Shown: piece by piece, positions 4,828 through 46,368 of the stretch
How positions within the stretch are numbered: the first letter of the stretch is position 1
How the letters are laid out: every line of letters begins with the position of its first letter
IMG/VR virus record: IMGVR_UViG_3300028394_002328
Location: 1 to 64,000 of that record
Direction: 5' to 3' (one strand)
DNA: 64,000 bases
Program-made: the position numbers and the translations under genes
Notes under the pieces: generated by a model
The model's database searches: none
Seen by the model: only the letters and a program-made list of their open reading frames with translations
Told to the model about the DNA's origin: nothing

Positions 4828-4830
4828 ATA
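4823..4830 (+). promoter_or_regulatory. Putative late promoter (CATAAATA)
   Basis: T4-like TATAAATA variant overlapping the upstream stop codon, 4 nt before ATG 4835. Confidence 0.45.
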
Positions 4831-4834: not shown

Positions 4835-5284
4835 ATGCCACAATATATAGGATTCAGCACTTTAGGTGCCAATTTACCTAAAACTACTAATGCCCCTACC
4901 GGCAATGATGGCGGAACAGGTAATATTGTTCGGCAAAATACTGTAGGTAAAAAGTTTAGACTAGTAGACGAACCTTTAGTAATACAAGATTTTGTAAACG
5001 CATTAAATATTAGGCAAGGACAAAAAGTAGGTCAGCCTGGATATGGAACTACTCTTTGGTCATTTATTTTTGAACCCAATACTAATGATACACAATTTAA
5101 ATTACAGACTGAAATCCAACGTGTGGCTAGTTTAGACCCTAGACTAATAGTAAACAGTGTGATAGCTTTCCCGCAAGAGCTTGGTATATTAATTGAAGTT
5201 GAAATAGCAGTGGCCCCGTTCAATGAAGCTCAAGTTCTTAGTTTATTTGCAGATACCAATCTTTCGCAGATTTTAATTCAATAA
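4835..5284 (+). CDS. gp25: Baseplate wedge subunit, gp25-like
   Basis: 'NALNIRQGQKVGQPGYGTTLWSFIFEP...IQRVASLDPRL' fits the GPW/gp25 pattern; synteny gp5-gp25-gp6. Confidence 0.88.
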   Translation: MPQYIGFSTLGANLPKTTNAPTGNDGGTGNIVRQNTVGKKFRLVDEPLVIQDFVNALNIRQGQKVGQPGYGTTLWSFIFEPNTNDTQFKLQTEIQRVASLDPRLIVNSVIAFPQELGILIEVEIAVAPFNEAQVLSLFADTNLSQILIQ

Positions 5285-5311
5285 TTCTTAAAAACCCGAG
5301 GTTTTAGGTAT

Positions 5312-8300: not shown

Positions 8301-8708
8301 ATGTTAACTGACAGCGTAATATTAAACAGTGTAATATTCAAGCCATTATTTGGACCTAAGGCGGCTGCTAACCTTAGAGGTACTATTAAAGTTATAAAAA
8401 ATAATAACGTAAATGCTAGTAATAGTGAGATTCGTACAGCAGTTCTTACTGCCATGAATGCTTATTTTAATATTAATAATTGGAATTTTGGAGATACTTT
8501 TTACTTCTCTGAATTGAGTGCTTATCTGCATGATCAGGTTGGAGAATTAATTAGTTCTGCTGTATTAGTTCCAAACGATCCTACAATGTCATTTGGCGAT
8601 CTATATGAAATTAAATGTGCGCCATATGAGATTTTCGTCAATGCTGCTACTGCCGATGATGTATTGGTTATTGCAGCGCTCACTCCCGCCGAGTTACAAA
8701 TTAGATAA
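5337..8708 (+). CDS. Baseplate wedge protein, gp6-like
   Basis: 'DYETLRKSFIDYLR...ENFIDTAERRDSVIKLANLVSYNP', 'YTFGDGVFSQIP' and 'QNRMVNGEDY' are typical of gp6/baseplate-J-like proteins. Confidence 0.85.
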   Translation: MATSSRQSALFGVNDWQAIYQTFREADFRSYDYETLRKSFIDYLRLYYPETFNDYIESSEFIALLDVVAFMGQGLAFRNDLNTRENFIDTAERRDSVIKLANLVSYNPKRNLAGQGFLKVISIQTTQNINDLNGINLGNLPILWNDPANPNWLEQFNTIINAALVNTQRVGRPGNVADLLGVLTSEYALKIPQDTLPIVPFTSTIDGITMNFELVSVTSVDEDYVYEIPPAPTGTFNMVYRNDKLGYGSPNTGYFFYFKQGTLQNYDFILEQQISNQVVNIGDIQGVNNTDTWLYQLNENNGTRLAWRKVDNVYADAYLQTETSQRKIFAVASRFNDQVAYTFGDGVFSQIPVGTYRAYVRAGNALTYTIDPNEMQGISVSFNYVDRFGKTQILTVALALQLPVSNAQVREPLAQIKQRAPTRYYTQNRMVNGEDYNNFPYTLYSSIIKSKAINRSSVGVSKNLDLLDPTGKYSSINSFATDGAMWQDDANGYLSLTINNTGNIITFLTDTLGSVLSSNRTTQYYTQNYTQYTINQASGDGVVYWQTSSVDANSLTGYFYNLVSNTETSIPIGTYSTNNVKYITPGALIKFVAPSGYYFDANNRLVAGIPGPSEQTFIWTTVLSVIGDGYNNGQGSFSNGSGPVTLNGYVPAGAQITTVLPAFDNSLSNAIIQECIIRMELQQNFSLVFNNALTIAEDRWSIRQYNDANYFINFLSLGNTRYTISYRSLKYYFGSVQDTRFTFDRDKLVYDPFSGKILQDFVKVLATNTQPSNNYPLAKDIQVNIIGQTVESDGYINDFEVEVASTDINNRGLIINPTFFQTVTGYTTGGANTGIYVFFELVEDAINLSRYQLVPSSEVVQYQTKTQIEVVKYDYPLGQLFYAYGDNLFYTSVQDTTVTTPYYLLVEQPQYSIRPGRQGLQFQYRHNSNNTTRIDPATTNIIDLYVVTQAYYTNYQKYIQDTTNTVPMPPKPTISELTQDYGQVNDYKMLTDSVILNSVIFKPLFGPKAAANLRGTIKVIKNNNVNASNSEIRTAVLTAMNAYFNINNWNFGDTFYFSELSAYLHDQVGELISSAVLVPNDPTMSFGDLYEIKCAPYEIFVNAATADDVLVIAALTPAELQIR

Positions 8709-8716: not shown

Positions 8717-11700
8717 ATGGCAACTAGAATCCGCACCCTAAACTTTCTACCAGAAATATTTCAAACTCCAACTAATGCTCAATTTTTAGCGGCTACTTTG
8801 GACCAACTTGTAGCTCAACCGCTGACTAAAACGATTGAAGGTTATGTAGGTAGTAGGTTTGGATATGGGGTTAATGCCAAAGATTATTATGTAACTGAAC
8901 CAACGAAAGTAAGAACAGATTATCAATTAGATCCAGGTGTAGTATTCACTAAAACTAATCAATCTACAGCACAAGATTTTATTAGTTACCCAGGTATACT
9001 TGATGCTCTTAAACTTGAAGGAGCATTAACTGACAATAATAGTAGACTTTTTAATAGTCAATTTTACTCATGGGATTCGTTTACTAATTTAGATAAGATT
9101 ATTAATTTTAATCAATACTATTGGATTCCTGAAGGCCCTGAACAAGTAGTAGTATCGTCTGATACAGTATTTGCTACTAACGATTACTTAGTAACTGATG
9201 TTATCAATGGGTATAATATTACACCTATTACTTCAACTGAGATAGGAACTACTAACCCAACATTAACATTGTTAAGAGGTGGTACATATACTTTTGCAGT
9301 TAATCAATCAGGTCAATTTTGGATTCAAGGTGCACCTGGTGTAACAGGGTATAGTCCAACTCAACCTAATTTACAAACTAGAGATGTATACGGTGTAGAT
9401 AATAATGGTGCAACTATAGGAACAGTTACATTCACAGTTCCTCCAAAAGACGCTCAAAATAATTATAATTTTCCTGGCAACAACTTAGTTGATGTAGTAA
9501 GCGATATTCCCTTCAATCAAGTCAACGGTGCTAGACTAAGTGATCTAGGTGGTATTGACGGTGTTACTGCGTTAAACGGCTTAACAGTGTTATTTTATAA
9601 TACAGGCATATCTAATGAAATTGGATTTACTTCAAATTTCTTTGACTACACAAATTATGATTACAATAATGATTTAGTAGCTACTGAAACTATTAATGTA
9701 ACCGCAACATCATCGACCGGCAATCTTATTACATGTGATTCAACTAGCAATTTAATAGTTGGAAATTCAATAGTATTCTCAGGAGTCGGTTTTGGTGGAT
9801 TGTCTATCTATTCTGAAACTTTACCTGATACATTATATTTCGTAGAAAGTATTTCAAGTCCTACTGAATTTTCAGTGTCATTATCAGTTGGTGGAGCGCA
9901 AGTACCTTTATCAAATGCTGCAGGTACATTAGTAGGTACAACTAATCAAGGACTGTTAGAAGAAGGTTTTTACACAACTGTTAACCAAAATTTCTATACA
10001 ATAGAATATATAGGAGATTTAACAGATCCTGTAATCAGATTAATACCTAGTTCTCTTATTCCTACTAATCAGAAAATAACAGCAAGTTTTGGTACACAAT
10101 GGATAAGCAGAGTTTTTTATAAAACTGCTTTTGGTATTATAAACATTGTTCCGTTTATAAGTGCCCCATTAGATACTCTATACTATCAAGATGGTACTAG
10201 TGCAAACAAAGTTGGTATAATTCGTATTATTGATAGTAATATAACGAATACGCTAGATGTAGAAACTGATATTTTAGGTCAGCCGCAATTCACTGCAACA
10301 AATGGTGTAGTGTTTACTAATGGATTAAAAGTAGTATTTCAGGGCGATGTAATTCCTGCAAGTTATAAAACTGGCGCATATTATGTTGAGGGCGTTGGTA
10401 GTAGCATAGAATTAATTCCAGTGAGTAATCTTATATCACCGGACCCCTTCACATCAAGTACATATGTACCATGGGATACTACAGCATGGGATATTGGTAA
10501 TTGGGAAGGAACTTCATATATTCCTGTAACTCCTGATTACATTACTATTGCAAGAAATAGTATTGACCGTAATGCTTGGTCAAGAAGTAATAGATGGTTC
10601 CATATTGACGTAATTAATGCTACGGCTGAATATAACAATGATCCTACATTAGTTACATTGTATGCTACATCAGAATATAAGGCTAAACGACCTATAATTG
10701 AATTTTATCCTAACTTGCGGTTATTTAATACCGGCATTGAAGGTAAAGCACCAGTAGACTTCATTGATTTTAGAACAACTGATGCATTTTCCCAAGTTGC
10801 AGGGCAGGAAAATTATTACCCTGATGTAACAGCATATACTGGGTATGACGCAGTTATTGGCACAGTAGCATCAAATACTACTACCACTATAGTTATTCCT
10901 ATTGAAAGTGTTCAGGGTACATTTGAAATAGGGCAATATGTTGCAGACTCTACAAATTTATTGCCTACTAATTCATATATTACCAATATCGTAACCACAA
11001 CTACGACCGTTACTTTAACTATAGAATGGGAATTCTCTACATCATTTACCGGTACTAGCGTAGCATCAGTGATAGGTACTGACACTACTGTAGATAATTA
11101 TGCTCTATTTGATGGATCACGCATAATATTTGCAGCCGATACTGACATAAATGTTAAAAACAAAATTTATGTATCTAGATTTTCTTCTATAAGTGGCTCT
11201 ACTCCAGTTATTACGTTAACTGAAGCAACTGATGGAGAAGTATTAGTTAATCAAGGAACAGTAATATTAAGAGGCTATGTTAATCAAGGTTTTGATTTTT
11301 ATTTTGATGGCTTAGAATGGATTGAGTCGCAAGAGAAAATAACGGTAAATCAACCCCCACTGTTTGATGTATTTGATGATAATGGAATTAGCTTTGGTAA
11401 TACTGATTTATATGTTGGTACTTCTTTCATAGGTAATAAATTATTTGCGTATGGTATTGGTGCAGGCATAAACGACATTGTATTAGGATTTCCAATAAGA
11501 TATAGTTCTGTAGATAATGTGGGTGATATATCATTTGACGTATCATTAAATTTAGATAAATTTAACTATGTGCAAGGTTCAACTCCTATTACGCAAAATG
11601 TTAATACTGGTTATGTGCATCAAGCAGTCAGCCGAACTGAATATATAAGACAAATTGGGTGGCAGACAGCAGTATCACCGAGTATTCAATATCAAATATT

Positions 11701-14700: not shown

Positions 14701-17700
14701 ATTAAAAATAGTTCAACCAAAACTTATATTTGATGAATTAGAATGGAAGCGTACAGATTACGATGAAATTCAAAAAGGATTGTTACCTAATAGTAGCACA
14801 AGAAGTTATGAAAGTACATTGTATTACGATGTAAATAAGGCTAATTTAGAAAATGATGCTGACTTATTAAGTTTCTCGTTGATCGGGTATCGTCCAAGAG
14901 ACTATTTAGCACTTGCTGATTTAACTGATATTACACAGGTAAATGTTTATAAAAACTTTATTAAGAATAAAGGAACACGAAATGCAACCGATGCATTTAA
15001 GGGAGCAAATCTTCCTCAAGGTGGCATTGACTATGACATTTACGAAAATTGGGCTATTAAGTCAGGTGAATTCGGTGGAGTTTTAAACAGTAATTTTGTT
15101 CAATTTAAAATTAATCAAAATTACATGACTGGAAATCCAAGTATAGTTGGACTTACAAATGGAGTATATAACGAAGGTGTTCAACAAGAAGTTCCTATAT
15201 ACTCATTGTTTAATTATGGTAGACCTATAAACACAGTAAACATATTACCTACTATATCATCACAAGAGCCATCTACAGTTTATCCTACAGCAGGCTATGT
15301 TAACTTCAATGATGTCAAGATGTCATCTTATTTTTATTCACAGCTTCCTTTAGCAGTGGATAGTAATAATTTGGTAGTGTTGTTATCACAATTTTATGTT
15401 CGTGATTATGTTTGGTTAGCAAATTACTTACAGCGTTGGGAAGTGTTTACTCCTAAGTCAATGGGTATAATATTAAATGTAAGTAACAACTTAAATGATA
15501 CTGCAACCGTTACATTTAAAACTCCTCACAATTTAACAAGATATGAACCTTTTGCAATTGTTAATTTTTCTGATGCAGTGAATGGGTACTATATCAGTAC
15601 AGTAATTGTAGACCAGTACAGAGTATTAATTACATTAAGTATTGACCCTTCTATTACTAATATTACTGGTCAAGGGGTAGGATTTAAATTCCAATCACAG
15701 CGTGTTGCTCAACCTAGTAACATTATAGATTTGCCATTATTAGATTCAGAATTTTTCAAAAATACCGTATGGGTAGATGAAAACACCGATGGCGGTTGGG
15801 CTGTTTATAGAAAAGGTATCAACTATCAATATCAAAATGAATTCACTAAATCTTCTTCAGTGACGTTTGGTAGTGCGGTAGCCACTAGTAGCCAACTAGG
15901 ATATTTAATAGGTGATGCTACTGCCGGTGCTGTGTACCGCTATACATTCAATGACTTAACACAAGCTTATGATTTAGGACAAACGTTAACTTCAGGTACT
16001 TCATTTGGTTCTACTATCTCTCATAATAGTGACATATATGTAATTTCTGAACCTACAACTACCCCGAGAATTTACATATACCAACTTCAAAGTAGTACTT
16101 TATCTGACGATTTAATTTTGTACCAAGCAGCAATTGCCGCACCAGGTGGAGTTACAAATTGGGGTAGTGCAGTAGCAATATCAGGCAATACAAATTGGAT
16201 TTATGTTTCTGATGTTGATAATAATACTGTACATGTATATAGAAAGTCAAACGTTGTTACTCCAGTAACCAATCTTACTGCAGGACAAACTTATATTATT
16301 ACAACAGTGGGCACTACTGATTTTACTACAGTGGGTGCTACATCAGATGATATAGGAACAGCATTCGTAGCCACTGGGGTAGGCACTGGTACAGGTACAG
16401 CAACAAAGAGTACATATCAAAAAGTAACAACTATAGACGGCGATGCATTGTCATTGACTGTAGCAGGAGATAATTTTGGTTATTCTTTAGCGACAGACTA
16501 TTATGGTGATACTTTAATTATTGGTACTCCTAATAAAGATTATAGCGTTACTATAGATAATTGGGGCTATGTATATGTGTTTGATCGTGCTGTACAAAAT
16601 ATCCAAGTACAAACTAATAGTGTCCCATTAACTCCGCAAATATTTAATTTAGCATGGACACCAACTTCATTATCAAAAACATTAACTGATACTAATAGCA
16701 CTGGTAATTTATTAACATTGAATAGTACATCAGGTATTACTGTTAATGATCCTATTATCTTTACAGGATCAGGCTTAGCAGGAACAGAAATTGTTTCAGA
16801 TCAAGTATATTATGTACGTTCAATTAGTGGAAGTGATATTACTATTAAAACTAGTAGATTTGCTACAGCGGCTGTAACTGTTGCTACCGTTTCTGCAATT
16901 ACAGTTACTACTATAGTACAAAATACTCCAATTTATGTTTCAGTAAATGGAAATTTAGTAGACGATAGTAACTATGCTATCATTTCTAATACTTTGGTAT
17001 ATACTAGTACATTAAATGCAGGCGACATTATTAATGTAAGTGGTCAAGAATTTACATTGATGCAAACACTTACTACTGAAAATACTCCAAAAGTTGGTGT
17101 ACATTTTGGTAACAGTGTAGATACAACTATCTATGCAAGTGAAATTATTGTCGGCGCGCCATATGAATTAGTTACACAAATTAAAGAAGGTGCGGTATAT
17201 CGTTACACCAACGGCGGTGGCAAATACGGTATGATAATTGGCACTAGTACTGTCAATGTAACTAGCGCTAGAAATTTATTAATTAATGGCTTCTTAGTCA
17301 CTGTTCCAATTGGCAATGCAACTACTGTAGCTAACGCTATTAATGCAGTGGCGATACCTAACATTGTTGCAACTGCAATTGATGGCAAGTTAATGTTATC
17401 ATTAGTTGATAATAATCTAGCACAGGTAAATGAAAAGATATTATTAAGTTCAACTAATAGTGCAACACTAGGTGAATTAGGTATAAACATATTCACTCAA
17501 ACACAGACAATAGAATGCCCGCATACTAATAGTCGCACACAGTTTGGTACTGTAGTTAAATTTAATGAGTACGGTAGCTTTGTTGCTAGTGCACCAGTTG
17601 GAACAAGATTTAGCAGTACTACTTTTGATTTTATAGATGATGAAAATCAAGATAATGACACTGTGTTTGATAACAATACCACTACATGGTTAGATACCTT

Positions 17701-20700: not shown

Positions 20701-23700
20701 TTCTATTTTAGCTAGTGCTCAAGGAGTAGCTTTTGAAATTGAAGATGTCAGAAATGACAGAGTAGTAACTTATTCGTCATTGATTCGTCAAGTAGCAAGT
20801 ACACAAGCATCAGATGATTCAATTACTTTAACTACTTTCAGTAACAATCCATCGGATGTAAACGCATCAGGTTCTACAATTGGTTTTTATATTGGCATGC
20901 CAATTAAATTTAATGGTGCTGTAGTGGGAGGATTAGTAAACGGTACTGTATATTATGTAAACAGCATAATTGATGATACTAATTTTACAATATCAGAAAA
21001 TAGCACTGGCAGTCCTATTAAAGCTCTATCAGACGGAACTGTTAGTGTTGCAGGGCTAGAATGTTTTGTAGGTGAAGTAACTGATACTGCAATATTATCA
21101 GTAATATATCCGGGTATTACAAATGTCACTGCTACTCATGCAGATACAAATACACTTACCATACCATTGAATCCAACTGGTACTGGTGGTACTATTGGAT
21201 TTTATATTAACTTGCCTGTATTTTTTACAGGAACAATGTTAGATGGTGTAGTAGAAAATCAAGTATATTATATAACAACCGTTGTAGACAATCAGACATT
21301 TACAATGTCCGAAGAACAGAACCCAACAACATTAAACATTGTTTCTACAGATGGATCATCTGATTATATTACTACTAGCGATGATACTTCAGTACTGTCA
21401 ATTAACGAACCGGTAATTTTTAATACCATGGTAATTGCTGGAGCAGAGTCTACTTCGTTTGGTGGATTAGTATCAGGAACAACCTACTATATTTCAAACA
21501 TCGTGAATGCTAGTACATTCCAAGTATCTTCTAATATTAACGGGGCTTCACTAAATTTATCCACTGTAGCTGCATCTACAACTACTAGCGCATTGTTAAC
21601 TAGTCAGAAAAATGTGGTTCAGTTATCTGACGATACTGGCAATGATATGATTATTAATATTAATTTACCAGTGAGCCCAGGTCAAGTAAATGGTCAAAGA
21701 TTCACTCTATATCAAACTTCTGAACAATATGTTGGATTAACAGGCACAGACGGGGCATTAATAGATAGAACGATCGGCGCAGTAATAGGTACACCTGATA
21801 TTATTGCGTTGACTACTTTAAGTGGCGGATTGACTGACATATACATTAATATGCCATTAGAGATATCTCAGGATATTGGATCATTAACAACTGGAACAAC
21901 CTATTATGTAATTGATACTGGCACTATAGAAATTGAATGTACTTCAACTTCATCATCAACAAATGAAATAACATGTGATACTACAGAATCATTATATGTT
22001 GATATGCCTATCGTATTCAATGGAGTGGGTTTAGGTGGTATTCAAATTAATGTTGAGTACTATGTACATACTATAGTTGATGGGACACATTTCAAAATTT
22101 CTGAGTCTATAAATGGGACGGTAAAAACTCTACAAAATAGTAATGGCACAATGAATGGTGTGGGGGAACCATATATCCAAGTATCTACAACACTTAGTGG
22201 GTCGGTTGAACCAACAGGTGATTCACAACAGGCTGCATCAATTTCAGTTGCAAGCCCGGCTGTAATTACTGTAGCTGTAGCGCCTGCTGATGGTACAAAA
22301 GTTGAATTCAGAAGTACTGGAGCACTACCTACAGGACTATTAGAAGACACTACATATTATGTAGTAAATTCATCTGGCACTACTTTTGAAGTAGCATATT
22401 TACCTAGCGGATCACCTATTGATACTACCGCTAGCGGTTCAGGTACTAATATTGTCATTGTGACTGATACAATAACCATCAATCAAACTATATTGACTAC
22501 TCCTGTATTTGATGTAAGTTATATTTTGGGAGGATACCGAGTTATAATAACTGATCCAGGGTTAGGATATGCTGTTAATAATACTATTACTATAGTGGGA
22601 ACAGATATGGGCGGTGCTACTACATTGAATGATTTAACATTAACAGTTGAGTCAGTCAATAGCACAGGAGAAATCACAAGTGTGATTTGTTATGGTACCC
22701 CTCCCGGTGCAACAGAAAATTATTACTTAAAAGTTATATCACCAAACGAGTTTGCCGTATATTCAAATCCATTATTGACCGTGCCAGTAAGTGGTATTGG
22801 ATTCTCTTATACAGGAATAGTTACAACAACTGTTACTGCTACTAATTTAAGCACTGATATTATAACAGTAGATGACACCAGTGAGTTCTCAGTTAATGAT
22901 CCGATTGTATTTACAGGAACAGTAGTTGGCGGATTGGTAGTAGGACAAACTTATTATATCTTAGACAATGTAAATTTCACACCTACTACACTTCAAGTAA
23001 GTGAAACTCCAAATGGTTCAGTATTTAACCTAACAGTTACTACTTCACTTCAAGACTTTACTATGGCTAAGGTTGGAGATTTTGCTTTATTACCTGAGCC
23101 CTTTGTCTTTAGTCAAAGTATAGTTAAGTATAATAACCGTGTATATGTTTGTGTTGTGAGTAATAGTGATCAAGAATTTATTTTTGGTAAGTGGGAACTG
23201 TTAACTAGTGGTGATCGCAGATTAAATGCATTAGACAGAATCATTGGATATTATCAGCCTACTATAAACATGCCTGGGATAGACCTTACTCAATTAGTAG
23301 ATGGCATAATATATCCTAATAGTACATATTTAGGCAATGCATTTGCACCTGATCAACAGTTTGAAATTGATACCTATTTACAAGATCAGCTTTTCTATCC
23401 TACTGAAGTGCAATCTAAATCTGTAGTTTGGAATGGCACTAATTATTTTGTAGTAGCAGATACTTCTTCGTATTCTACTATATTATACAGTACAACCGGC
23501 GATGATTGGGCATTTAATAAATTAGCTAATTCTAACCTAACAACCACTGATTTAACCTATGTTAATGAAAAATATTTAATCACTACTAATAATCCGGCTA
23601 CTCCAATATTACTAAGTGAAGATGGCGTTGAATGGACAGCTTCAGAAAATTATATTGGTTTAGGTGAAGTTACTGCAAAACCAATTTCTGATGGACAGTT

Positions 23701-26700
23701 AATATTAAATTCTATCAATTACTTTAATGGGGTCTATGTAGCAGTTGGTCAAAATATTAACACAAGTACCAATGGTGTATTATGGAGAGAAAGATTTAAG
23801 TTTACTAATGGATTAACAAACGAATTATACTCAGTATTCGGATCAACTATTACGCTAAGTGCTCCGTATATTGCAGTTGGTAAAGGTCAATTTATTGATT
23901 ATTCTACTGGTTTACAAACAATTAGAGATATTAACCTAGTATATACCTCATATGATAGTATAAACTGGAATCAGGCTACTCCGGTAACTAATAAAGGTTT
24001 TTATGGTATTACATATGACACTAATATTTTTATTGCTGTGGGTGAAGATGGGGTCATATACACTTCTCAGAACGGTGATTCTTGGTTTGGTATTAATGAA
24101 ACAACTATTACCAGTGTAAACTCCTCTAGTAATATATTGAATGTGGCTGCGACTGCAGGATTTAATGTAAATGATATAGTAAGATTTACTGAATCATTTA
24201 ACGTTATTTCTTCATCTACAACTTATTATATTGTTAGTATACCATCATTAACTCAGGTACAAGTTAGTACAACATTAGGTGGATCACCTATCACTCTAAC
24301 TTCAGTCGATCCAACTACTACTACATATATGTATCTATATCCTAGAACACAGGATCTTAATGATGTACATTATGCTAACGGTAAATTTATAGCAGTAGGT
24401 AATGTAGGAACAATAAAAACTTCTACAACAGGTTATGCATGGACATCAGTTGCGTCAGGTGTAACTGAAAATTTACTCGGTATTAATTATAATGCAGATG
24501 ATGGTGTTTGGATAGCAGTAGGAGACAATAATACTATTATCACCAGTGACAACAACGGTGCATCATGGACTAATAGTTCAGTGTTAATCGTAGATCCTAC
24601 AGTTTACAATGTGCAGGGTGCTGAATTCTCATATGGATATGGTCCTGAAGAATTAGTTCCAGGTGTAGTTACTGATAATATAATGTTAACCGTAGCTACT
24701 CGTCCGGGTACTAATTGGCCAGCAGTAGAATATCAACATGTGGGATACAATGTAGTAACGGTTGAACTTACCCCTGAATCAGAACAACAAAGATATTATA
24801 GTTTCCTTTATGCAGTTACTACTCCCGCACAATTAACAGTTTCAGTCATTGATGGCACTACAGGCGTAAGCACTACAATATATCCTGATGCAAGTTATTA
24901 TGTAGATTGGGTTAACAGTGTTGTAGTATTAAATAATCCATTGACTTTCTCTCCTGTTGCAGACAGATTAAGAATTGATGTGTATGAAGTTGGTAATGGT
25001 AATCAGTTAGTAAAATCTAGCACAAAATCTGATCCAATTATAACTAATACAACTACTGGATGGAATGAGATTAACTTAAATTGTAATTACTCTGCTACCA
25101 TATTCACCGGCAGCGGTGTAATTAGCCCAGGCACAGTACCTAAAGAAACTGTAGCGATTGCTACAACCAGTGGCACAAACACTATTTCTTGTGAAAGTGT
25201 TAGAGACTTTGTGCTAAATAGTCCTATCACTTTCCAAGGAACAACGTTTGGCGGAATATTAGAAGACACAATATATTATGTAAAAACCATTAGTTATATA
25301 ACTAATAGTATTACTGTTTCTACGACATATAATATAGGTACTGGCACAGCAGGCCCTACACTAGTGCTTTCAAGTGATACAGGTTCAATGGTGGTCATTA
25401 TTCAAGTTGGTTCGGGTGCAGAGTGGACTCCTCCAATATGCTATTTAAATGGAAATAAATTAGTCTTTGGAACTACAGAAACAGTAACTAAAACCAATGG
25501 TATTACTAATACAGTTACGTGCCATACAACTGGCACATTGATACCGGGGCAAAATATTACCTTTAGCGATACAATGTTTGGGGGAGTTATAATACCACAA
25601 ACTGTGTATAATATATTAAGTATCAGTGATGCTAATGAATTTATATTAGAAGATCCTGATAATCCGGGTAATCCATTAGCATTAACTACAGCAACCGGAG
25701 GAGCCGAATTAATTACAAATGATTATGCTTTTGGAATCTCAGAAAATGGCATAACAGCAAAAATAATATTTGCAGTTGGTACTTATAACACTCAAAGTGA
25801 TTATTTGTCATATGCAGTATTTGGAGAAACAGTTCCAACTCAATACGGATATACTATACCTGAAACTCAAATTATATTGAGTGACGGCACTAGTACTTAT
25901 GAATTAACTAATTTTGTAGGTAATGATAATGTTACTAATGCAATTGTTGAAGTTAATGGTTTAAGGGTCTTAGATACAGATTATACCATTGATTCTAATT
26001 TAAATGAAATTACTTTTGTGTCTAGTCCAAGTTTAGGTGATACTATTGCGGTTACTTCTTATAATTTAACTGATAGACAATATCTAAGCACAATGTACGA
26101 TGTAAACTCGGCGTCAAGTACAGTAGCAAATATTATATCTGTTAACAATACTATTAGTCCTTATCTTGCTATAACTAATGTAACATCATGTACTTCAGTT
26201 GGTAATTTAATTACATGTGTTAGTACTACTGGATTTGTAATAGGACAAACCATTATATTTAAGGGCACTGGATTTGGTAATATTCTTACTGACGGAACAG
26301 TGTATTATATTGATTCTATACCTGGCTTAACTACATTTACCATCAGTCAGACTAATGGAGGAGGTATTTTTGATCCAGGAACAGGCTCGGGATTAATGAT
26401 ATCATATATAGGAGGCACGCCGACTGTTCGTGTTACCACTGGTGTCCCCCATGATTTAACTACTAATGATATCGTAAGAATTGATGGTACTTTAGGTTCT
26501 ACCCAACTTAATAATGTTACTTTTTATGTACATGTGATAAACGATACTCAAATTGATTTATATTCACAAGCATATGATCCTGCTTTTACTGCAACTAATT
26601 ATCCGATAACTACTGTTTCTACTTATATAAGTGGCGGATATGTATGGATTGATACTATTTTCACACTGGTTACTGTAGATGCAACTGCAACCTCAACTGA

Positions 26701-27751
26701 TCCAATAGATGGAAATAGAATTACGGTATCATCTACTGATAATTTAGTATTAGAAACCCCTGTAATATTTACTGACTTTGGGGTAGATTTAGGCGATCCT
26801 GTACTAGGTGGCTTGATCGCAGGAACTACATATTATATTAAAGATATTTTTAATTCAACTGAATTTTCAGTATCAAGTGAAAGAAACGGTGACGAATTTG
26901 TTTTAACTAATGATTCAGGAACAATGAACGTAACACAGTGGGAACAGGTTAATGTTGATCGTTTATGGGTAACTGTTAATGGTTATCGTGTACCATCAAG
27001 TTCATTACGCATAAATCCTGCTAATAATTTAAGCATACTAGCTACAATTCAAGCTGGTGACGTTGTAATCATTACTAGCATGATGCCTTCTCCGACTCCA
27101 AATGAACAAGTATTCTTACTCAATGTTAATACAATTAATCAGGGTACAGTGTATAGAGCAAATACACAAACTAGAACTTGGTTAGTAGAGCCATTATATA
27201 ATATACATGATACGATATATGTTAATGATGTAACTAGATTGACCGATACTGTAATACAAAATGTTACAGCACCTGCTCCGGTCGATGGAATTTATAGTAT
27301 TGGATTAACCGCTGATAAAAATCTGATTTCTAATATTACTGTATTCAATGTGAGTACTAATAGTATTATTAGCAGTGATTACTACTACATTTTAGTGGAG
27401 AATTTATCTCCCATACTTAAGATTACATCAGGTGTTACTACAGGAAACAGTTTATTAATTACAGTGTTAGAAGGTAATACATTGTTTATTAATGGGGAAC
27501 AGATTAAATTTACTACAGTAGATATTGATCTTAACAGCATAACAGGGCTACAGCGTGGAGCAAATGGCACAGGCGAGCAGGTCTATATTCCGCAATATAC
27601 TGAAGTATTTGGGTTGTTATCGTCTAATAGAATGACTAATATACTATATAATCAGACTTGGAACTCATATGATTATAATGAAACTTTAGGAGATCCGTTG
27701 CAAATAAGTAATACACAAGCAGCAGTTTTCTTAAATGGCGATGTTAATTAA
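8717..27751 (+). CDS. Giant (6,344 aa) modular virion/baseplate protein with FG-GAP-like and BNR-like propellers and many repeated beta domains
   Basis: Uninterrupted 19-kb ORF in the gp7-like position after gp6; 'YLNEVKPYHVVI' motif; Thr/Ser/Asn-rich; repeated 'G..YY(V/I)..I...F.VS' modules. Confidence 0.75.
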   Translation: MATRIRTLNFLPEIFQTPTNAQFLAATLDQLVAQPLTKTIEGYVGSRFGYGVNAKDYYVTEPTKVRTDYQLDPGVVFTKTNQSTAQDFISYPGILDALKLEGALTDNNSRLFNSQFYSWDSFTNLDKIINFNQYYWIPEGPEQVVVSSDTVFATNDYLVTDVINGYNITPITSTEIGTTNPTLTLLRGGTYTFAVNQSGQFWIQGAPGVTGYSPTQPNLQTRDVYGVDNNGATIGTVTFTVPPKDAQNNYNFPGNNLVDVVSDIPFNQVNGARLSDLGGIDGVTALNGLTVLFYNTGISNEIGFTSNFFDYTNYDYNNDLVATETINVTATSSTGNLITCDSTSNLIVGNSIVFSGVGFGGLSIYSETLPDTLYFVESISSPTEFSVSLSVGGAQVPLSNAAGTLVGTTNQGLLEEGFYTTVNQNFYTIEYIGDLTDPVIRLIPSSLIPTNQKITASFGTQWISRVFYKTAFGIINIVPFISAPLDTLYYQDGTSANKVGIIRIIDSNITNTLDVETDILGQPQFTATNGVVFTNGLKVVFQGDVIPASYKTGAYYVEGVGSSIELIPVSNLISPDPFTSSTYVPWDTTAWDIGNWEGTSYIPVTPDYITIARNSIDRNAWSRSNRWFHIDVINATAEYNNDPTLVTLYATSEYKAKRPIIEFYPNLRLFNTGIEGKAPVDFIDFRTTDAFSQVAGQENYYPDVTAYTGYDAVIGTVASNTTTTIVIPIESVQGTFEIGQYVADSTNLLPTNSYITNIVTTTTTVTLTIEWEFSTSFTGTSVASVIGTDTTVDNYALFDGSRIIFAADTDINVKNKIYVSRFSSISGSTPVITLTEATDGEVLVNQGTVILRGYVNQGFDFYFDGLEWIESQEKITVNQPPLFDVFDDNGISFGNTDLYVGTSFIGNKLFAYGIGAGINDIVLGFPIRYSSVDNVGDISFDVSLNLDKFNYVQGSTPITQNVNTGYVHQAVSRTEYIRQIGWQTAVSPSIQYQIFEFEYDVLNPTTTFTCDIAMMNTIDTQWPTIEVYINNIIQDNTTYTVTVNSNSTVVTLNDTIIDNTVIQILLLSDQVSKTAYYSIPINLNNNPFNQDITVANVGDIRGQYRSMFYNNPNTTGQVFGSNNFRDLGNLVPWGNRIIQNSASLVLPSVFLRKQNHNLFNSLLFNSREYIKFKTLLVDTVNNTDYVQRYSPSEILDNALDQITFSKTDNQPFFWSDMLPSKAAYITNTYTFANSLDVSIYPLSRIYDFTSANYYGVLVYLTRTVNNITVTRQLIINQDYTVSTDSPSLTITLDLLPGDIITIKEYNQTYGSYVPNTPTKLGLYPAYIPSVALDINYSQSTYFILGHDGSYNKLYGDYFPETNILVDFRDQALLEYETRVYNNLKLSSAVPVQEYEVLPGFFRDTDYSFDEWLEIYSPGFLNWVGQNRLDYKRQIYQTNNEFTYNYWQSGNAINRESIYQGYWRGMYQYYYDTSTPNTSPWEMLGFVNKPSWWETRYGPAPYTSDNLVLWTDLSEGIDWNDGNPVVIPAAVRPELLQVIPVDSEGNLLSPLRNIVGNYNSNIFQRDWKVGDEAPVEFSYRRSSSYPFDLMRILALTKPAEFFNLGVDLDNYKYSEEFGQYLVNNRSHLVISNVEIYGSGTAKTSYINWIIDYEKQVGVDATANITTLLDNLDVRLVYRLAGFSDKALLKFYVEKGTPNSRNASLLIPDESYSVLLYDNQPFNRVIYSGVIVQITQYGFSVFGNSQTQTYFRTLKPYYNGKYDRITIDNLNVKVSQDHSDVEVIVPYNTVFGTVQEVATFLSNYGAWLTSLGVTFEQQENELEINWNQMIAEFLYWAQTGWDEGSIVTLNPSARTISFNKDSNIVQPLTIQQTNFILNQNLYPIQNRDLAIIREETLFTATALNDGDTISYAQFNISNFEHGIVFDNVTLFNDIIYNLITGLRQTRITVRGTKSADWNGTVDAQGFIYNQDNIKEWNNTVTYTKGEIILYKNKYWVALKIVQPKLIFDELEWKRTDYDEIQKGLLPNSSTRSYESTLYYDVNKANLENDADLLSFSLIGYRPRDYLALADLTDITQVNVYKNFIKNKGTRNATDAFKGANLPQGGIDYDIYENWAIKSGEFGGVLNSNFVQFKINQNYMTGNPSIVGLTNGVYNEGVQQEVPIYSLFNYGRPINTVNILPTISSQEPSTVYPTAGYVNFNDVKMSSYFYSQLPLAVDSNNLVVLLSQFYVRDYVWLANYLQRWEVFTPKSMGIILNVSNNLNDTATVTFKTPHNLTRYEPFAIVNFSDAVNGYYISTVIVDQYRVLITLSIDPSITNITGQGVGFKFQSQRVAQPSNIIDLPLLDSEFFKNTVWVDENTDGGWAVYRKGINYQYQNEFTKSSSVTFGSAVATSSQLGYLIGDATAGAVYRYTFNDLTQAYDLGQTLTSGTSFGSTISHNSDIYVISEPTTTPRIYIYQLQSSTLSDDLILYQAAIAAPGGVTNWGSAVAISGNTNWIYVSDVDNNTVHVYRKSNVVTPVTNLTAGQTYIITTVGTTDFTTVGATSDDIGTAFVATGVGTGTGTATKSTYQKVTTIDGDALSLTVAGDNFGYSLATDYYGDTLIIGTPNKDYSVTIDNWGYVYVFDRAVQNIQVQTNSVPLTPQIFNLAWTPTSLSKTLTDTNSTGNLLTLNSTSGITVNDPIIFTGSGLAGTEIVSDQVYYVRSISGSDITIKTSRFATAAVTVATVSAITVTTIVQNTPIYVSVNGNLVDDSNYAIISNTLVYTSTLNAGDIINVSGQEFTLMQTLTTENTPKVGVHFGNSVDTTIYASEIIVGAPYELVTQIKEGAVYRYTNGGGKYGMIIGTSTVNVTSARNLLINGFLVTVPIGNATTVANAINAVAIPNIVATAIDGKLMLSLVDNNLAQVNEKILLSSTNSATLGELGINIFTQTQTIECPHTNSRTQFGTVVKFNEYGSFVASAPVGTRFSSTTFDFIDDENQDNDTVFDNNTTTWLDTFPNAGAVYMFDYLSNYNETLINCGKFVYAQNVNSQDLEYGLQPNYGTALDFYNYSVIIGTPGFSPSNGQAITYTNTLNQKDWSVYRSSSPVVDITSIGNIQLFSAQTNETLINMDYIDPLQGKILGAARENIDYVANTDPATYNNGDLVPSNLVWGVTQVGQVWFNTTNIRYVNYHQNSNTYNCKYWGTLFPNSDVAVYTWITSEVLPINYIGSGTVYDPTKYSIQYIINPAGALTPIYFYWVRDTGIISPNLGKTLADSIIAAYIANPRNSGISYFAPLLPSVYALYNAGDYINANDSVLNIGFGTGTSTDVVHNQYDLIRANFADDYLPGLPNTYLGETEPYSLYARLLDSLSGTDTSGQVVPDPFLPLAVQTGVLVRPRQSFFYNRLGAVKNFFETLNEIVKQYPLFEISDATFTYASGEFFDTTNYWETINWWAPRYNDNTKSTIQVAIYSDLATLSVTEGTIVTVATNGIGLAETYIFTNSEWIRIGLTNGTIQFKSSLWDYASARIGFGDNFFDTTPYDSYPSEETRYLVRALTEQLPSELLIYRNRILILLFEYIVSETIETQNYLPWLNKTSFVDVGHTIRELLPIEVFQSDNQNFLEGYLNEVKPYHVVIKDFLFKYTGINVYQGNITDFDVPAQYNTSIQRWVSPQLVYSNPSDVNQYLPTDPIWQEPEYINWFENYGVSLTGQDGVQITTLTSYLALNSGEMSVNNAQGFPINGIVQIGTEQIGFSSVDRNLNVLVGLTRGVNGTPITNHIPGELIYINLPAVLVLDGGRGYTEPPKVVAYIDPTLYPAPTVPAVLTAVMSLDSVLRVDVINPGQGYAVLPKIIIDPSTVIFFEGSAVSTTYNTIILYAPLLQTGDLVQYNVAPGGTQIGGLESNQWYYVNLLETVPTVVVALYSNYTDAIYDVNRVKLLSTGSGDQSLSVGAKASAISSAAPARENNITLRFDRTTYNSQVIDWQAGAYYGAFYAGDYFNSEAVSSSSIKLQSTQPLISSILASAQGVAFEIEDVRNDRVVTYSSLIRQVASTQASDDSITLTTFSNNPSDVNASGSTIGFYIGMPIKFNGAVVGGLVNGTVYYVNSIIDDTNFTISENSTGSPIKALSDGTVSVAGLECFVGEVTDTAILSVIYPGITNVTATHADTNTLTIPLNPTGTGGTIGFYINLPVFFTGTMLDGVVENQVYYITTVVDNQTFTMSEEQNPTTLNIVSTDGSSDYITTSDDTSVLSINEPVIFNTMVIAGAESTSFGGLVSGTTYYISNIVNASTFQVSSNINGASLNLSTVAASTTTSALLTSQKNVVQLSDDTGNDMIININLPVSPGQVNGQRFTLYQTSEQYVGLTGTDGALIDRTIGAVIGTPDIIALTTLSGGLTDIYINMPLEISQDIGSLTTGTTYYVIDTGTIEIECTSTSSSTNEITCDTTESLYVDMPIVFNGVGLGGIQINVEYYVHTIVDGTHFKISESINGTVKTLQNSNGTMNGVGEPYIQVSTTLSGSVEPTGDSQQAASISVASPAVITVAVAPADGTKVEFRSTGALPTGLLEDTTYYVVNSSGTTFEVAYLPSGSPIDTTASGSGTNIVIVTDTITINQTILTTPVFDVSYILGGYRVIITDPGLGYAVNNTITIVGTDMGGATTLNDLTLTVESVNSTGEITSVICYGTPPGATENYYLKVISPNEFAVYSNPLLTVPVSGIGFSYTGIVTTTVTATNLSTDIITVDDTSEFSVNDPIVFTGTVVGGLVVGQTYYILDNVNFTPTTLQVSETPNGSVFNLTVTTSLQDFTMAKVGDFALLPEPFVFSQSIVKYNNRVYVCVVSNSDQEFIFGKWELLTSGDRRLNALDRIIGYYQPTINMPGIDLTQLVDGIIYPNSTYLGNAFAPDQQFEIDTYLQDQLFYPTEVQSKSVVWNGTNYFVVADTSSYSTILYSTTGDDWAFNKLANSNLTTTDLTYVNEKYLITTNNPATPILLSEDGVEWTASENYIGLGEVTAKPISDGQLILNSINYFNGVYVAVGQNINTSTNGVLWRERFKFTNGLTNELYSVFGSTITLSAPYIAVGKGQFIDYSTGLQTIRDINLVYTSYDSINWNQATPVTNKGFYGITYDTNIFIAVGEDGVIYTSQNGDSWFGINETTITSVNSSSNILNVAATAGFNVNDIVRFTESFNVISSSTTYYIVSIPSLTQVQVSTTLGGSPITLTSVDPTTTTYMYLYPRTQDLNDVHYANGKFIAVGNVGTIKTSTTGYAWTSVASGVTENLLGINYNADDGVWIAVGDNNTIITSDNNGASWTNSSVLIVDPTVYNVQGAEFSYGYGPEELVPGVVTDNIMLTVATRPGTNWPAVEYQHVGYNVVTVELTPESEQQRYYSFLYAVTTPAQLTVSVIDGTTGVSTTIYPDASYYVDWVNSVVVLNNPLTFSPVADRLRIDVYEVGNGNQLVKSSTKSDPIITNTTTGWNEINLNCNYSATIFTGSGVISPGTVPKETVAIATTSGTNTISCESVRDFVLNSPITFQGTTFGGILEDTIYYVKTISYITNSITVSTTYNIGTGTAGPTLVLSSDTGSMVVIIQVGSGAEWTPPICYLNGNKLVFGTTETVTKTNGITNTVTCHTTGTLIPGQNITFSDTMFGGVIIPQTVYNILSISDANEFILEDPDNPGNPLALTTATGGAELITNDYAFGISENGITAKIIFAVGTYNTQSDYLSYAVFGETVPTQYGYTIPETQIILSDGTSTYELTNFVGNDNVTNAIVEVNGLRVLDTDYTIDSNLNEITFVSSPSLGDTIAVTSYNLTDRQYLSTMYDVNSASSTVANIISVNNTISPYLAITNVTSCTSVGNLITCVSTTGFVIGQTIIFKGTGFGNILTDGTVYYIDSIPGLTTFTISQTNGGGIFDPGTGSGLMISYIGGTPTVRVTTGVPHDLTTNDIVRIDGTLGSTQLNNVTFYVHVINDTQIDLYSQAYDPAFTATNYPITTVSTYISGGYVWIDTIFTLVTVDATATSTDPIDGNRITVSSTDNLVLETPVIFTDFGVDLGDPVLGGLIAGTTYYIKDIFNSTEFSVSSERNGDEFVLTNDSGTMNVTQWEQVNVDRLWVTVNGYRVPSSSLRINPANNLSILATIQAGDVVIITSMMPSPTPNEQVFLLNVNTINQGTVYRANTQTRTWLVEPLYNIHDTIYVNDVTRLTDTVIQNVTAPAPVDGIYSIGLTADKNLISNITVFNVSTNSIISSDYYYILVENLSPILKITSGVTTGNSLLITVLEGNTLFINGEQIKFTTVDIDLNSITGLQRGANGTGEQVYIPQYTEVFGLLSSNRMTNILYNQTWNSYDYNETLGDPLQISNTQAAVFLNGDVN

Positions 27752-39085: not shown

Positions 39086-39087
39086 AA

Positions 39088-46337: not shown

Positions 46338-46344
46338 TGTGATT

Positions 46345-46352: not shown

Positions 46353-46368
46353 TGGTAATATAGTCTAC

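What the first reader, a model, noticed from the sequence alone, without database searches (positions are those of the whole stretch)
8717..27751. 6,344-aa virion protein built by repeated, nested insertion of one ~70-aa beta module
Seen: at least 15 copies of 'T.T....(N/D).IT...T....N.PI.F.G...GG...G..YY(V/I)..I....F.VS....G....L'. Some copies sit inside other copies: ~21325-21600 within the unit spanning ~21120-21660, and ~21920-22165 between '...YYVIDTG' and 'EPYIQVSTTLSG'. Another (~24100-24340) interrupts a BNR-like propeller. Inference: a self-inserting module creates a branched surface, and its Thr/Ser richness makes it a plausible acceptor for the neighbouring glycosylation pathway.
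Basis: partly seen in the sequence, partly recalled or inferred. Interest (0 to 1): 0.62.

Follow-up and report, generated by a model that had tools for sequence, protein, structure and literature searches.

The report
Giant phage baseplate protein, nested barrels
A 6,344-residue tail-baseplate protein of a freshwater jumbo phage really is built in part from about 15 copies of one small beta-barrel, some of them sitting inside loops of other copies or of a propeller. The arrangement is old and conserved rather than actively self-inserting, and nothing found here links it to glycosylation.

Summary
Window 8717-27751 (+) is one intact 6,344-aa ORF. It carries 13 strong copies, one split copy and one weak copy of an ~80-aa Thr/Ser-rich module.

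AlphaFold2 models the module as a six-stranded beta-barrel (pLDDT 96). Its closest solved folds are the E1 FCCH domain and the insertion domains of phage tail and capsid proteins. It has no Pfam model but matches 3,329 metagenomic cluster representatives.

Support comes from split HMM coordinates, strand continuity in the model, one discontinuous fold match, and an ortholog with an empty propeller site.

The ORF follows gp5-like and gp6-like baseplate genes. Its core is shared with PA5oct gp355 (detected in virions) and Atu_ph07 gp180, both of which lack the module.

More than 300 orthologs of about 6.4 kaa keep the same module positions. Copies resemble their positional orthologs (50-73%) more than their paralogs (median 33%), so the insertions are ancient. 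A separate ~50-aa mini-module is the element that varies between orthologs.

No glycosyltransferase was found nearby. The glycan-acceptor idea is untested.

Verdict: a new variant of a known kind (recursive same-fold domain insertion, as in cyanobacterial RpoC2 Si3).

The parts
8717..27751 (+). Giant ORF, 6,344 aa: virion structural protein in the gp7 position of the baseplate gene block
   Evidence: intact ORF; phrog_10938 'virion structural protein', E 7e-225; gene order gp5-like, gp6-like, this ORF, as in T4, PA5oct and Atu_ph07.
8717..9286 (+). Conserved N-terminal core (aa 1-190), shared with PA5oct gp355 and Atu_ph07 gp180
   Evidence: BLASTP: 29-33% identity, E 1e-21 to 1e-23. It is the most conserved stretch among orthologs (0.76 mean identity).
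11114..15196 (+). Conserved central core (aa ~800-2160)
   Evidence: matches phrog_10938 and jumbo phages PA5oct, Atu_ph07, SCTP-2 and RaK2-like phages at 23-31% identity.
17888..19696 (+). Second conserved core block (aa ~3058-3660)
9701..9955 (+). Module copy 1 (aa 329-413), an insertion into the N-terminal core
   Evidence: E 8e-23. Absent, with conserved flanks, in orthologs P0057 and P0110. The isolate orthologs have no module copy anywhere.
15524..17911 (+). FG-GAP-like propeller region (aa ~2270-3065). The blade motifs are interrupted by the mini-module, module copy 2 and another insert.
   Evidence: FG-GAP_2 at aa 2583-2622, 22.5 bits against a cut-off of 23. Blade motifs were read directly from the translation and found by regex. 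No structure model was made.
16259..16414 (+). Mini-module (~50 aa, aa 2515-2566): the element whose number and position vary among orthologs
   Evidence: E 8e-18. There are 0-9 copies at differing sites in orthologs. It is absent here in 3 of 20 orthologs.
16685..16939 (+). Module copy 2 (aa 2657-2741), between FG-GAP-like blades
   Evidence: E 1e-18.
20786..21076 (+). Module copy 3 (aa 4024-4120)
   Evidence: matches E1 FCCH at Z 7.1 over model residues 21..120.
21116..21325 (+). Host barrel A, strands 1-5 (aa 4134-4203)
21326..21613 (+). Inner barrel A (aa 4204-4299), inserted in the strand 5-6 loop of host A
   Evidence: rows 1-2: Z 8.0 and 7.9 over model residues 204..300.
21614..21664 (+). 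Host barrel A, closing strand 6 (aa 4300-4316; strand at 4306-4315)
   Evidence: an extra strand with the module's 'G-x-M' strand-6 motif follows a complete inner barrel. row 23: one compact barrel aligns over 133..321.: +4.8 bits over the tandem reading.
21764..21922 (+). Host barrel B, strands 1-4 (aa 4350-4402)
   Evidence: HMM positions 12-46, E 6.5e-7; the same split in orthologs..
21923..22165 (+). Inner barrel B (aa 4403-4483), inserted in the strand 4-5 loop of host B
   Evidence: E 4e-29; single-domain model, pLDDT 95.9; fold matches.
22166..22246 (+). Host barrel B, strands 5-6 (aa 4484-4510)
   Evidence: excising the inner barrel raises the junction-spanning score from 15.7 to 33.4 bits, against 0-5 bits at the seven control sites that have no adjacent copy. 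HMM positions 50-76 in orthologs; continuous strands at aa 4396-4412 and 4475-4490.
22259..22486 (+). Module copy (aa 4515-4590), tandem; a polymorphic unit
   Evidence: A precise 77-79-aa absence in 12 of 20 orthologs.
22820..23092 (+). Module copy (aa 4702-4792)
23429..24586 (+). BNR/Ycf48-like beta-propeller (aa ~4905-5290), about seven blade motifs
   Evidence: PSII_BNR E 0.0018, 18 bits, below the cut-off of 27. Blade motifs were read. JGI names orthologs 'photosystem II stability/assembly factor-like'.
24110..24340 (+). Module copy (aa 5132-5208), inserted in the propeller between blade motifs
   Evidence: The site is empty in ortholog P0057, with both blades kept.
25160..25414 (+). Module copy (aa 5482-5566)
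25487..25729 (+). Module copy (aa 5591-5671)
26183..26425 (+). Module copy (aa 5823-5903)
   Evidence: This is the copy that gave the weak Pfam E1_FCCH hit.
26423..26635 (+). Degenerate module copy (aa 5903-5973)
   Evidence: E 1.5e-5. Detected more strongly in orthologs.
26684..26953 (+). Module copy (aa 5990-6079)
5337..8708 (+). gp6-like baseplate wedge subunit, immediately upstream
   Evidence: phrog_10646, E 4e-258. RaK2, Atu_ph07 and others; far more conserved than the giant ORF.
1084..4827 (+). gp5-like baseplate hub / tail lysozyme
   Evidence: phrog_13211 and Phage_base_V.

Best explanation
The ORF encodes the giant structural protein that occupies the gp7 position (directly after the gp6-like wedge gene) in the baseplate gene block. 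The phage is an uncultured 335-kb freshwater jumbo myovirus of the RaK2 / PA5oct / Atu_ph07 supergroup.

Shown:
- The conserved core (aa 1-190, ~800-2160, ~3058-3660) is shared with the isolates' 3.9-4.4 kaa proteins.
- The isolates lack the module.
- The rest of the protein is elaboration: two propellers, repeated small domains, and about 15 copies of an ~80-aa six-stranded beta-barrel.
- There are split-host arrangements at two barrel sites and one propeller site.
- The arrangement is conserved across more than 20 orthologs.
- The periphery is more variable than the core.

Inferred: how the insertion works.
- The barrel's first and last strands are the longest in the single-module model, and at both junctions of nest B they run on without a break from the host's strands.
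- I take them to pair, so that the chain enters and leaves the barrel at one point. I could not read this off coordinates.
- On that reading a whole barrel can sit in a surface loop of another domain on a two-stranded stalk without unfolding its host.
- In this protein a barrel is used in the strand 4-5 loop of one barrel, in the strand 5-6 loop of another, and between blades of the propellers. The remaining copies are tandem.
- The result is a branched, Thr/Ser-rich beta structure.

Inferred: role.
- The core anchors the protein in the baseplate wedge beside the gp6-like protein.
- The module-rich C-terminal ~2,700 aa projects from the baseplate periphery as a multivalent host-surface (probably glycan) adhesion scaffold. 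It would be present in six or a multiple of six copies per virion.

Inferred: history.
- The insertions arose by ancient intragenic duplication and in-frame insertion and have since been fixed.
For: Gene order and family:
-.
- PA5oct gp355 is marked ESI-MS/MS in its record.
- The PA5oct paper names the neighbouring baseplate proteins (PMC7318152).

Core against elaboration:
- BLASTP blocks; no module in the isolates.

Module and fold:
- copies.
- pLDDT 95.9, six strands.
- E1 FCCH Z 8.2, rmsd 2.5 A over 76 aa. Phage Mystique tail-tube insert Z 8.1. Phage FCWL1 head-to-tail protein Z 8.0. EF-Tu domain-2-type barrels Z 6-6.7. P22 I-domain Z 5.4.
- endosialidase barrel.
- near-identical folds (TM 0.9+) in phage proteins carrying CBM5/12, He_PIG, tail-collar, baseplate-wedge, ConA-like and pectate-lyase domains.

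Nesting:
- excision test, 33.4 bits against 0-5 at the seven control sites that have no adjacent copy.
- orthologs show HMM positions [2-45][1-74][51-76].
- model pLDDT 84, with continuous strands across both junctions.
-, row 23: a discontinuous barrel over residues 133..321.
- empty propeller site in P0057.
- the same split-host pattern in six unrelated module proteins, at two loops.

Ancient origin:
-.

Peripheral and fast-evolving:
- gp6-like orthologs are 75-96% identical, where the module region is 40-83%.
- Mean identity is 0.72-0.76 in the core windows and 0.47-0.58 in the C-terminal windows.

The module belongs to the adsorption apparatus:
- Two of the three other ORFs with the module directly follow a 2,620-aa collagen-like tail fibre gene.
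Against: - No sequence similarity to T4 gp7 was detectable (hhalign probability <1%). The gp7 role rests on gene order alone.
- The predicted-complex test with the gp6-like protein could not be run.
- I could not read model coordinates. Barrel closure by distant strands is inferred from strand order, from one discontinuous fold alignment and from HMM coordinates, not from a contact map.
- For nest A the sequence support is only +4.8 bits.
- The fold matches (Z about 8) are in the range the tool itself calls 'common arrangement'.
- The adhesion function has no direct evidence. CBM5/12 and BNR matches in this protein are below Pfam thresholds.
Confidence: 0.7

Rival explanations
1. Plain tandem array with strand-swapped or mis-modelled boundaries. 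The barrels follow one another along the chain, and the apparent host halves are degenerate partial copies or linkers.
For: - For nest A, the host HMM match already reaches position 78 when it uses the residues that follow directly, and the gain from the distant strand is small.
- Most other copies are tandem.
- AlphaFold2 was run with only 24 aligned sequences.
Against: - For nest B, the N half stops at HMM position ~46 and a C half resuming at ~50 follows a complete copy. The same holds in many orthologs and in unrelated proteins.
- The excision test gives 33 bits against 0-5 at the seven control sites that have no adjacent copy.
- Long unbroken strands cross both junctions at pLDDT >90.
- The propeller insertion has an empty-site ortholog.
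Confidence: 0.12
2. An actively spreading ('self-inserting') module. The barrel coding unit still copies itself into new loops, which drives rapid diversification of this gene.
For: - Module-sized insertions and deletions exist between orthologs at about 16 sites.
- Some mini-module pairs inside one ortholog are 80-86% identical at distant sites.
- The same nesting pattern recurs in unrelated proteins.
Against: - In this window the barrel copies are 24-51% identical to each other and closer to their positional orthologs.
- Both nestings are fixed in all 24 orthologs compared.
- No long DNA repeats or flanking repeats were found.
- The variable element is mainly the ~50-aa mini-module, of which the window has one copy.
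Confidence: 0.1
3. Glycan acceptor scaffold. The Thr/Ser-rich barrels are O-glycosylated by the products of the neighbouring sugar pathway, giving a glycan coat on the baseplate.
For: - Modules are 27.7% Thr+Ser.
- The window carries nucleotide-sugar enzymes: C-methyltransferase, epimerase, UDP-Glc/GDP-Man dehydrogenase, DegT aminotransferase and carbamoyltransferase.
- Virion glycosylation is known in mycobacteriophages (Freeman et al. 2023, as cited in PMC12619734).
Against: - No glycosyltransferase family was detected in the window ORFs scanned, even at E 0.1.
- The conserved Thr/Ser positions lie within the predicted strands and the conserved motif, so they may be structural rather than acceptor sites.
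- Such clusters in phages more often modify DNA or host surface glycans (background knowledge; PMC12619734).
- Nothing here tests glycopeptides.
Confidence: 0.08

Closest known systems
PA5oct gp355 (gp128 in the original numbering) and Atu_ph07 gp180: 'virion structural protein', phrog_10938
   Same: - Same gene position, directly after the gp6-like wedge gene.
- Shared core blocks at 25-33% identity.
- The PA5oct protein is marked as detected in virions by ESI-MS/MS.
   Different: - 3,857 and 4,449 aa against 6,344 aa.
- No copy of the barrel module or of the mini-module.
- No FG-GAP-like blade motifs were found by the blade regex.
- The window's C-terminal ~2,700 aa has no counterpart.
T4 gp7 baseplate wedge protein (and its P2 gpI / TssG equivalents)
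   Same: - Gene order gp5, gp6, gp7.
- Large multi-domain wedge protein that carries the peripheral baseplate. The T4 part rests on established knowledge of the T4 baseplate.
   Different: - No detectable sequence similarity.
- Six times longer.
- The (gp6)2-gp7 interaction was not tested.
Cyanobacterial RNA polymerase RpoC2 Si3: recursive insertion of sandwich-barrel hybrid motif domains
   Same: One small beta domain is duplicated and inserted into loops of its own copies, giving nested A1-B-A2 architectures up to six levels deep (PMC13114784; PMC10895346).
   Different: - A different fold and a different cellular machine.
- Here the depth is two levels in the window. In some orthologs a third element sits inside the inner barrel, or two barrels share one host loop.
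- Here the same barrel is also inserted into propellers.
Six-stranded beta-barrels used as insertion domains: E1 FCCH domain, P22 coat I-domain, phage tail-tube and capsid insertion domains, endosialidase beta-barrel
   Same: - Same strand number and a similar size (~80 aa here), and they superpose structurally: Z 8.2 for FCCH, 8.1 for the Mystique tail tube, 5.4 for the P22 I-domain.
- The endosialidase matches are Foldseek rows with TM 0.55-0.57.
- From background knowledge, each of these is itself an insertion into another domain, the endosialidase barrel into a propeller.
   Different: - No significant sequence relationship. Pfam E1_FCCH gives 21 bits against a cut-off of 29.5, in one copy only.
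- The P22 I-domain match is E 0.011 with 13 sequences but 0.57 with 65.
- Here the barrel is inserted into itself and is repeated about 15 times.

Membership tests
phrog_10938 / PA5oct gp355-type jumbo-phage virion structural protein | Significant match to the family profile over the core | tested here: met
   E 7e-225 (aa 1019-1968) and 5e-56 (aa ~3077-3402)..
phrog_10938 / PA5oct gp355-type jumbo-phage virion structural protein | Gene lies directly downstream of the gp6-like baseplate wedge gene | tested here: met
   for the window. for Atu_ph07 and PA5oct.
phrog_10938 / PA5oct gp355-type jumbo-phage virion structural protein | Incorporated in the virion | not testable with these tools
   Known only for PA5oct, from the record note (ESI-MS/MS).
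T4 gp7 baseplate wedge subunit | Sequence or profile similarity to gp7 | tested here: not met
   hhalign of three ortholog profiles against T4 gp7, probability 0.1-0.2%.
T4 gp7 baseplate wedge subunit | Position in the gene order gp5 - gp6 - gp7 | tested here: met
T4 gp7 baseplate wedge subunit | Forms the (gp6)2-gp7 wedge core | not tested
E1 FCCH-like / translation-protein-type six-stranded beta-barrel (fold level) | About 80 residues, six antiparallel strands, superposes on FCCH | tested here: met
   six strands, pLDDT 95.9; 4p22_B Z 8.2, rmsd 2.5 A, 76 aligned. Z about 8 is at the edge of what the tool regards as more than a common arrangement.
Pfam PF16190 E1_FCCH (sequence family) | Score above the gathering threshold | tested here: not met
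   21.1 bits against 29.5, one copy only; no copy matches when scanned alone.
P22 coat protein I-domain | Sequence or structural relationship | tested here: inconclusive
   Profile E 0.011 falls to 0.57 with the deeper alignment. Structure Z 5.4, 20% identity.
BNR / Ycf48-like beta-propeller | Pfam PSII_BNR above threshold; about seven blades | tested here: inconclusive
   E 0.0018, 18 bits against 27. Seven blade-like motifs were read.
Domain-insertion (A1-B-A2) architecture | Host domain is discontinuous in sequence, with a complete domain between its two parts | tested here: met
   Nest B. Propeller. Nest A: (row 23), with weaker sequence support.
O-glycosylated virion protein | Glycopeptides, and a cognate glycosyltransferase | not testable with these tools
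   No glycosyltransferase family in the window ORFs scanned by Pfam. Two short ORFs, 42522-43172 and 43169-43891, were scanned only at E 0.001.

The most novel reading that the evidence does not exclude
The barrel and its ~50-aa companion mini-module could be a general 'insertable cassette' system of aquatic jumbo phages. In this reading the units are repeatedly copied within a gene and dropped in frame into surface loops of barrels and propellers. Orthologs show a further element inside an already inserted barrel, and two barrels in one host loop. This would give baseplate and fibre proteins a recursive, branching architecture. It would be a way of diversifying host-binding surfaces distinct from tip swapping or diversity-generating retroelements.
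Probability: 0.2. Interest if true: 0.7.

Novelty: new variant of a known kind. Interest (0 to 1): 0.5.

Why it matters
- It defines an undescribed family of more than 300 baseplate proteins of about 6.4 kaa in freshwater jumbo phages.
- It defines a widespread phage barrel module (3,329 cluster representatives) that has no Pfam model.
- It gives a second clear natural example, after cyanobacterial RpoC2 Si3, of one small beta domain inserted recursively into itself. Here the example sits in a virion protein whose periphery evolves much faster than its core.
- Comparing orthologs yields filled and empty sites, which makes this a usable system for studying which loops tolerate whole-domain insertion.
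- The module model would improve annotation of phage receptor-binding proteins.

Tried and rejected
- Megablast of two 6-kb pieces against isolated phages: no match. This phage has no close cultured relative.
- Sequence search of aa 1-4100 against the PDB: nothing.
- Foldseek with the whole 831-aa model: only meaningless low-TM rows.
- P22 I-domain homology: suggested by a 13-sequence profile (E 0.011). Not upheld with 65 sequences (E 0.57), and structurally only Z 5.4. I keep it as a fold analogy only.
- hhalign of ortholog profiles against T4 gp7: no signal.
- ESM Atlas feature search of aa 1-320: best score 0.81, below the level the tool treats as evidence. One search was a size slip.
There is no verdict either way.
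- Blade-motif regex for an uninserted FG-GAP propeller in PA5oct and Atu_ph07 as an 'empty' comparator: no blades found.
- The 'moraphage' lineage paper (PMC12619734) describes a different phage group (200-307 kb, distinct from the T4 group). I used it only for background on phage glycosyltransferases.
- Read laying was not used. No genetic code other than table 11 was needed.
Full report
**The object**

Window 8717-27751 (+) is a single ORF of 6,344 codons with no stop under table 11. This is in DNA of about 34% G+C. The window is the first 64 kb of a 335,035-bp IMG/VR virus record estimated 95% complete.

- The same stretch occurs at 100% identity on an independent 28-kb contig (L011).
- At least half of its sampled 31-mers are held by 12 sequencing runs, all metagenomes and most labelled freshwater. 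19 runs from 16 studies hold at least part of it.
- More than 300 proteins, most of those listed 6.0-6.8 kaa long, match its module-rich region at E<=0.001.

The ORF is real and not an assembly artefact.

**Context and identity**

The three genes run in this order:
- 1084-4827: a gp5-like hub/lysozyme (phrog_13211, Phage_base_V).
- 5337-8708: a gp6-like wedge subunit (phrog_10646, E 4e-258).
- 8717-27751: the giant ORF, which matches phrog_10938 'virion structural protein' at E 7e-225.

tblastn of the core and of the gp6-like protein finds the RaK2 / PA5oct / Atu_ph07 / SCTP-2 group of jumbo myoviruses at 23-33% identity.

In PA5oct and Atu_ph07 the ortholog (gp355, 3,857 aa; gp180, 4,449 aa) also lies directly after the gp6-like gene. 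The PA5oct record marks it as found in virions by ESI-MS/MS. The PA5oct paper lists the adjacent baseplate proteins and calls gp128 one of the two largest proteins (PMC7318152).

T4 has the order 5, 6, 7, so this is the gp7 position. Homology to T4 gp7 itself could not be shown (hhalign probability below 1%). The gp7 role is therefore an inference from gene order.

**The module**

- A profile from seven seed copies found six further copies. Iteration settles on 13 strong copies.
- A broader profile trained on about 2,900 copies from orthologs adds a half-copy at aa 4355-4407 and a degenerate copy at 5900-5973. That gives 15 in all.
- Modules are 27.7% Thr+Ser against 18.1% elsewhere in the protein.
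- A single module folded with 65 aligned copies gives pLDDT 95.9 and six strands.
- The best solved matches are the E1 FCCH barrel (Z 8.2, rmsd 2.5 A, 76 residues), the insertion domain of a phage tail-tube protein (Z 8.1) and a phage head-to-tail protein (Z 8.0).
- Next come EF-Tu domain-2-type barrels (Z 6-6.7) and the P22 coat I-domain (Z 5.4). Foldseek also lists the endosialidase barrel.
- Predicted viral structures contain near-identical barrels (TM above 0.9). They sit in proteins with CBM5/12, He_PIG, tail-collar, baseplate-wedge, ConA-like and pectate-lyase domains.
- No Pfam family covers the module.
- Its profile matches 3,329 cluster representatives at E<=0.001, some with more than 30 tandem copies. 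All ten clusters looked up are unnamed metagenomic proteins.
- In this genome the module also occurs in three smaller ORFs. Two of them directly follow a 2,620-aa collagen-like tail-fibre gene.

It is thus a new sequence family of a known fold, used in phage adsorption structures.

**Nest B (reader: ~21920-22165)**

- The profile matches aa 4355-4402 only up to position ~46. A complete copy follows (4403-4483). In many orthologs a third match covering positions ~50-76 comes next.
- Removing 4402-4481 in silico raises the junction-spanning score from 15.7 to 33.4 bits. The same operation gives 0-5 bits at the seven control sites that have no adjacent copy; sites with an adjacent copy are uninformative.
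- In the AlphaFold2 model of aa 4000-4830 (24 orthologs, mean pLDDT 84, above 90 here) two long unbroken strands cross the junctions.
- Strand 4396-4412 runs from host strand 4 into inner strand 1. Strand 4475-4490 runs from inner strand 6 into host strand 5.

This is an insertion into the strand 4-5 loop.

**Nest A (reader: ~21325-21600 within ~21120-21660)**

- The model gives the host five strands (4134-4198), then a complete six-strand barrel (4205-4296), then one more strand (4306-4315). That last strand carries the module's strand-6 motif.
- A single 103-residue barrel from the PDB aligns 81 residues over model positions 133..321. That range brackets the inner barrel (row 23).
- Sequence support is small, +4.8 bits over the tandem reading.

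I rate nest A as likely and nest B as firmly supported.

I could not inspect coordinates, so barrel closure is inferred.

**Propeller insertion (reader: ~24100-24340)**

- The copy at aa 5132-5208 lies between two blade motifs. About seven such motifs lie between aa 4905 and 5290.
- The Pfam PSII_BNR match is weak (E 0.0018).
- Ortholog P0057 lacks 61 residues exactly here while keeping both blades.

- The copy at aa 329-413 interrupts the conserved N-terminal core. It is absent in P0057 and P0110, and the isolate orthologs carry no module copy at all.
- The copy at aa 2657-2741 and a ~50-aa mini-module at aa 2515-2566 lie between FG-GAP-like blade motifs. This was read from the translation, with a weak FG-GAP_2 hit.

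**Age and dynamics**

- Module positions are the same in 105 full-length orthologs, with 11-16 copies each.
- Both nestings are present in all 24 orthologs aligned.
- Each copy resembles its positional ortholog (typically 50-73%) more than any paralog (median 33%, maximum 51%).
- DNA repeats inside the ORF are at most 57 nt, most of them at the conserved GG...YY motif.

So the barrel insertions are ancient.

Module-sized changes between orthologs do exist:
- There are 45 insertions and 19 deletions of 35 aa or more among 20 orthologs, at about 16 insertion sites. Most inserted pieces are recognisable as the barrel or the mini-module.
- The 4515-4590 copy is missing as a unit in 12 of 20 orthologs.
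- The mini-module ranges from 0 to 9 copies at varying sites.
- Some mini-module pairs within one protein are 80-86% identical.
- The mini-module occurs inside host B, inside inner B and inside host A in different orthologs.
- One ortholog (P0061) has two barrels in the host A loop.
- Split-host triples also occur in six unrelated module proteins, at a second loop position.

**Core against periphery**

- gp6-like orthologs are 75-96% identical.
- The giant protein's module region is 40-83% identical across orthologs.
- Along the protein, mean identity is 0.72-0.76 in the core windows and 0.47-0.58 in the C-terminal windows.

This fits an anchored core with an exposed, faster-evolving exterior.

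**Glycosylation**

The window holds six paralogous radical-SAM genes and nucleotide-sugar-modifying genes. No glycosyltransferase family was found in the ORFs scanned, even at E 0.1. Virion glycosylation exists in other phages (cited in PMC12619734). Nothing here connects this protein to it.

**Comparison and verdict**

Recursive insertion of one small beta domain into itself is known from cyanobacterial RpoC2 Si3 (PMC13114784; PMC10895346). Single barrels of this fold are known as inserts in E1 enzymes, P22 coat protein and endosialidases.

What appears new here:
- the sequence family of the module;
- its use as self-insert, propeller-insert and tandem unit all in one baseplate protein;
- the large uncharacterised family of orthologs of about 6.4 kaa.

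'Self-inserting' should be read as an ancient evolutionary process. The glycan-acceptor idea remains speculation.

**Limits**

- Only table 11 was used.

Noticed in passing
window 33967-41327 (+): Six consecutive paralogous radical-SAM ORFs. In four of them the SPASM iron-sulfur domain lies N-terminal (aa ~14-85) to the radical-SAM core (aa ~126-300), the reverse of the usual order.
   Followed up: no
window 44231-57798: A cluster of nucleotide-sugar-modifying genes with no recognisable glycosyltransferase. It holds a C-methyltransferase, an NAD epimerase/dehydratase and a 790-aa UDP-Glc/GDP-Man dehydrogenase fusion. It also holds a 749-aa B12-binding radical-SAM protein, a DegT aminotransferase fragment and a NodU/CmcH-type carbamoyltransferase.
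   Followed up: partly
window 57810-64000 (ORF continues to genome position 64706): A second giant ORF (2,298 aa) with no Pfam hit and only a marginal PHROG hit (E 0.006). It has 11.4% Thr+Ser and no module copies.
   Followed up: partly
window 16259-16414, and orthologs (e.g. L013, L015, L016, L024, P0061): A ~50-aa mini-module whose conserved core motif is roughly G-Q-T-Y-x-I...G-T-T-D-F-T...G-A...F-x-A-T-G-x-G-T-G-T-A. It is present 0-9 times per ortholog at differing loop sites. Some intra-protein pairs are 80-86% identical. The barrel HMM also weakly matches some of the inserted segments that carry it.
   Followed up: partly
genome C1:133516-145824 (L055) and C1:114624-116015 (L054): A 2,620-aa collagen-like tail-fibre gene is followed by two ORFs (839 and 424 aa) carrying the barrel module. 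A third ORF (463 aa) carries two barrels plus a mini-module.
   Followed up: partly
window 5337-8708: The gp6-like wedge protein is unusually well conserved. More than 7,500 metagenomic homologs score at E<=1e-20, and the 120 listed are 75-100% identical and nearly all 1,121-1,132 aa long. This contrasts with the fast-evolving neighbour.
   Followed up: no
window aa ~3770-3830 and ~4597-4660 of the giant ORF (nt ~20025-20205 and ~22505-22695): Repeated short 'G-x-G-Y...P-x-(V/I)' beta units (D12; strands). They form another small domain type between the barrels. Two CBM5/12-like motifs (aa ~1973-2012 and ~4795-4830) are below the Pfam threshold here, but PF02839 is listed for some orthologs.
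   Followed up: no
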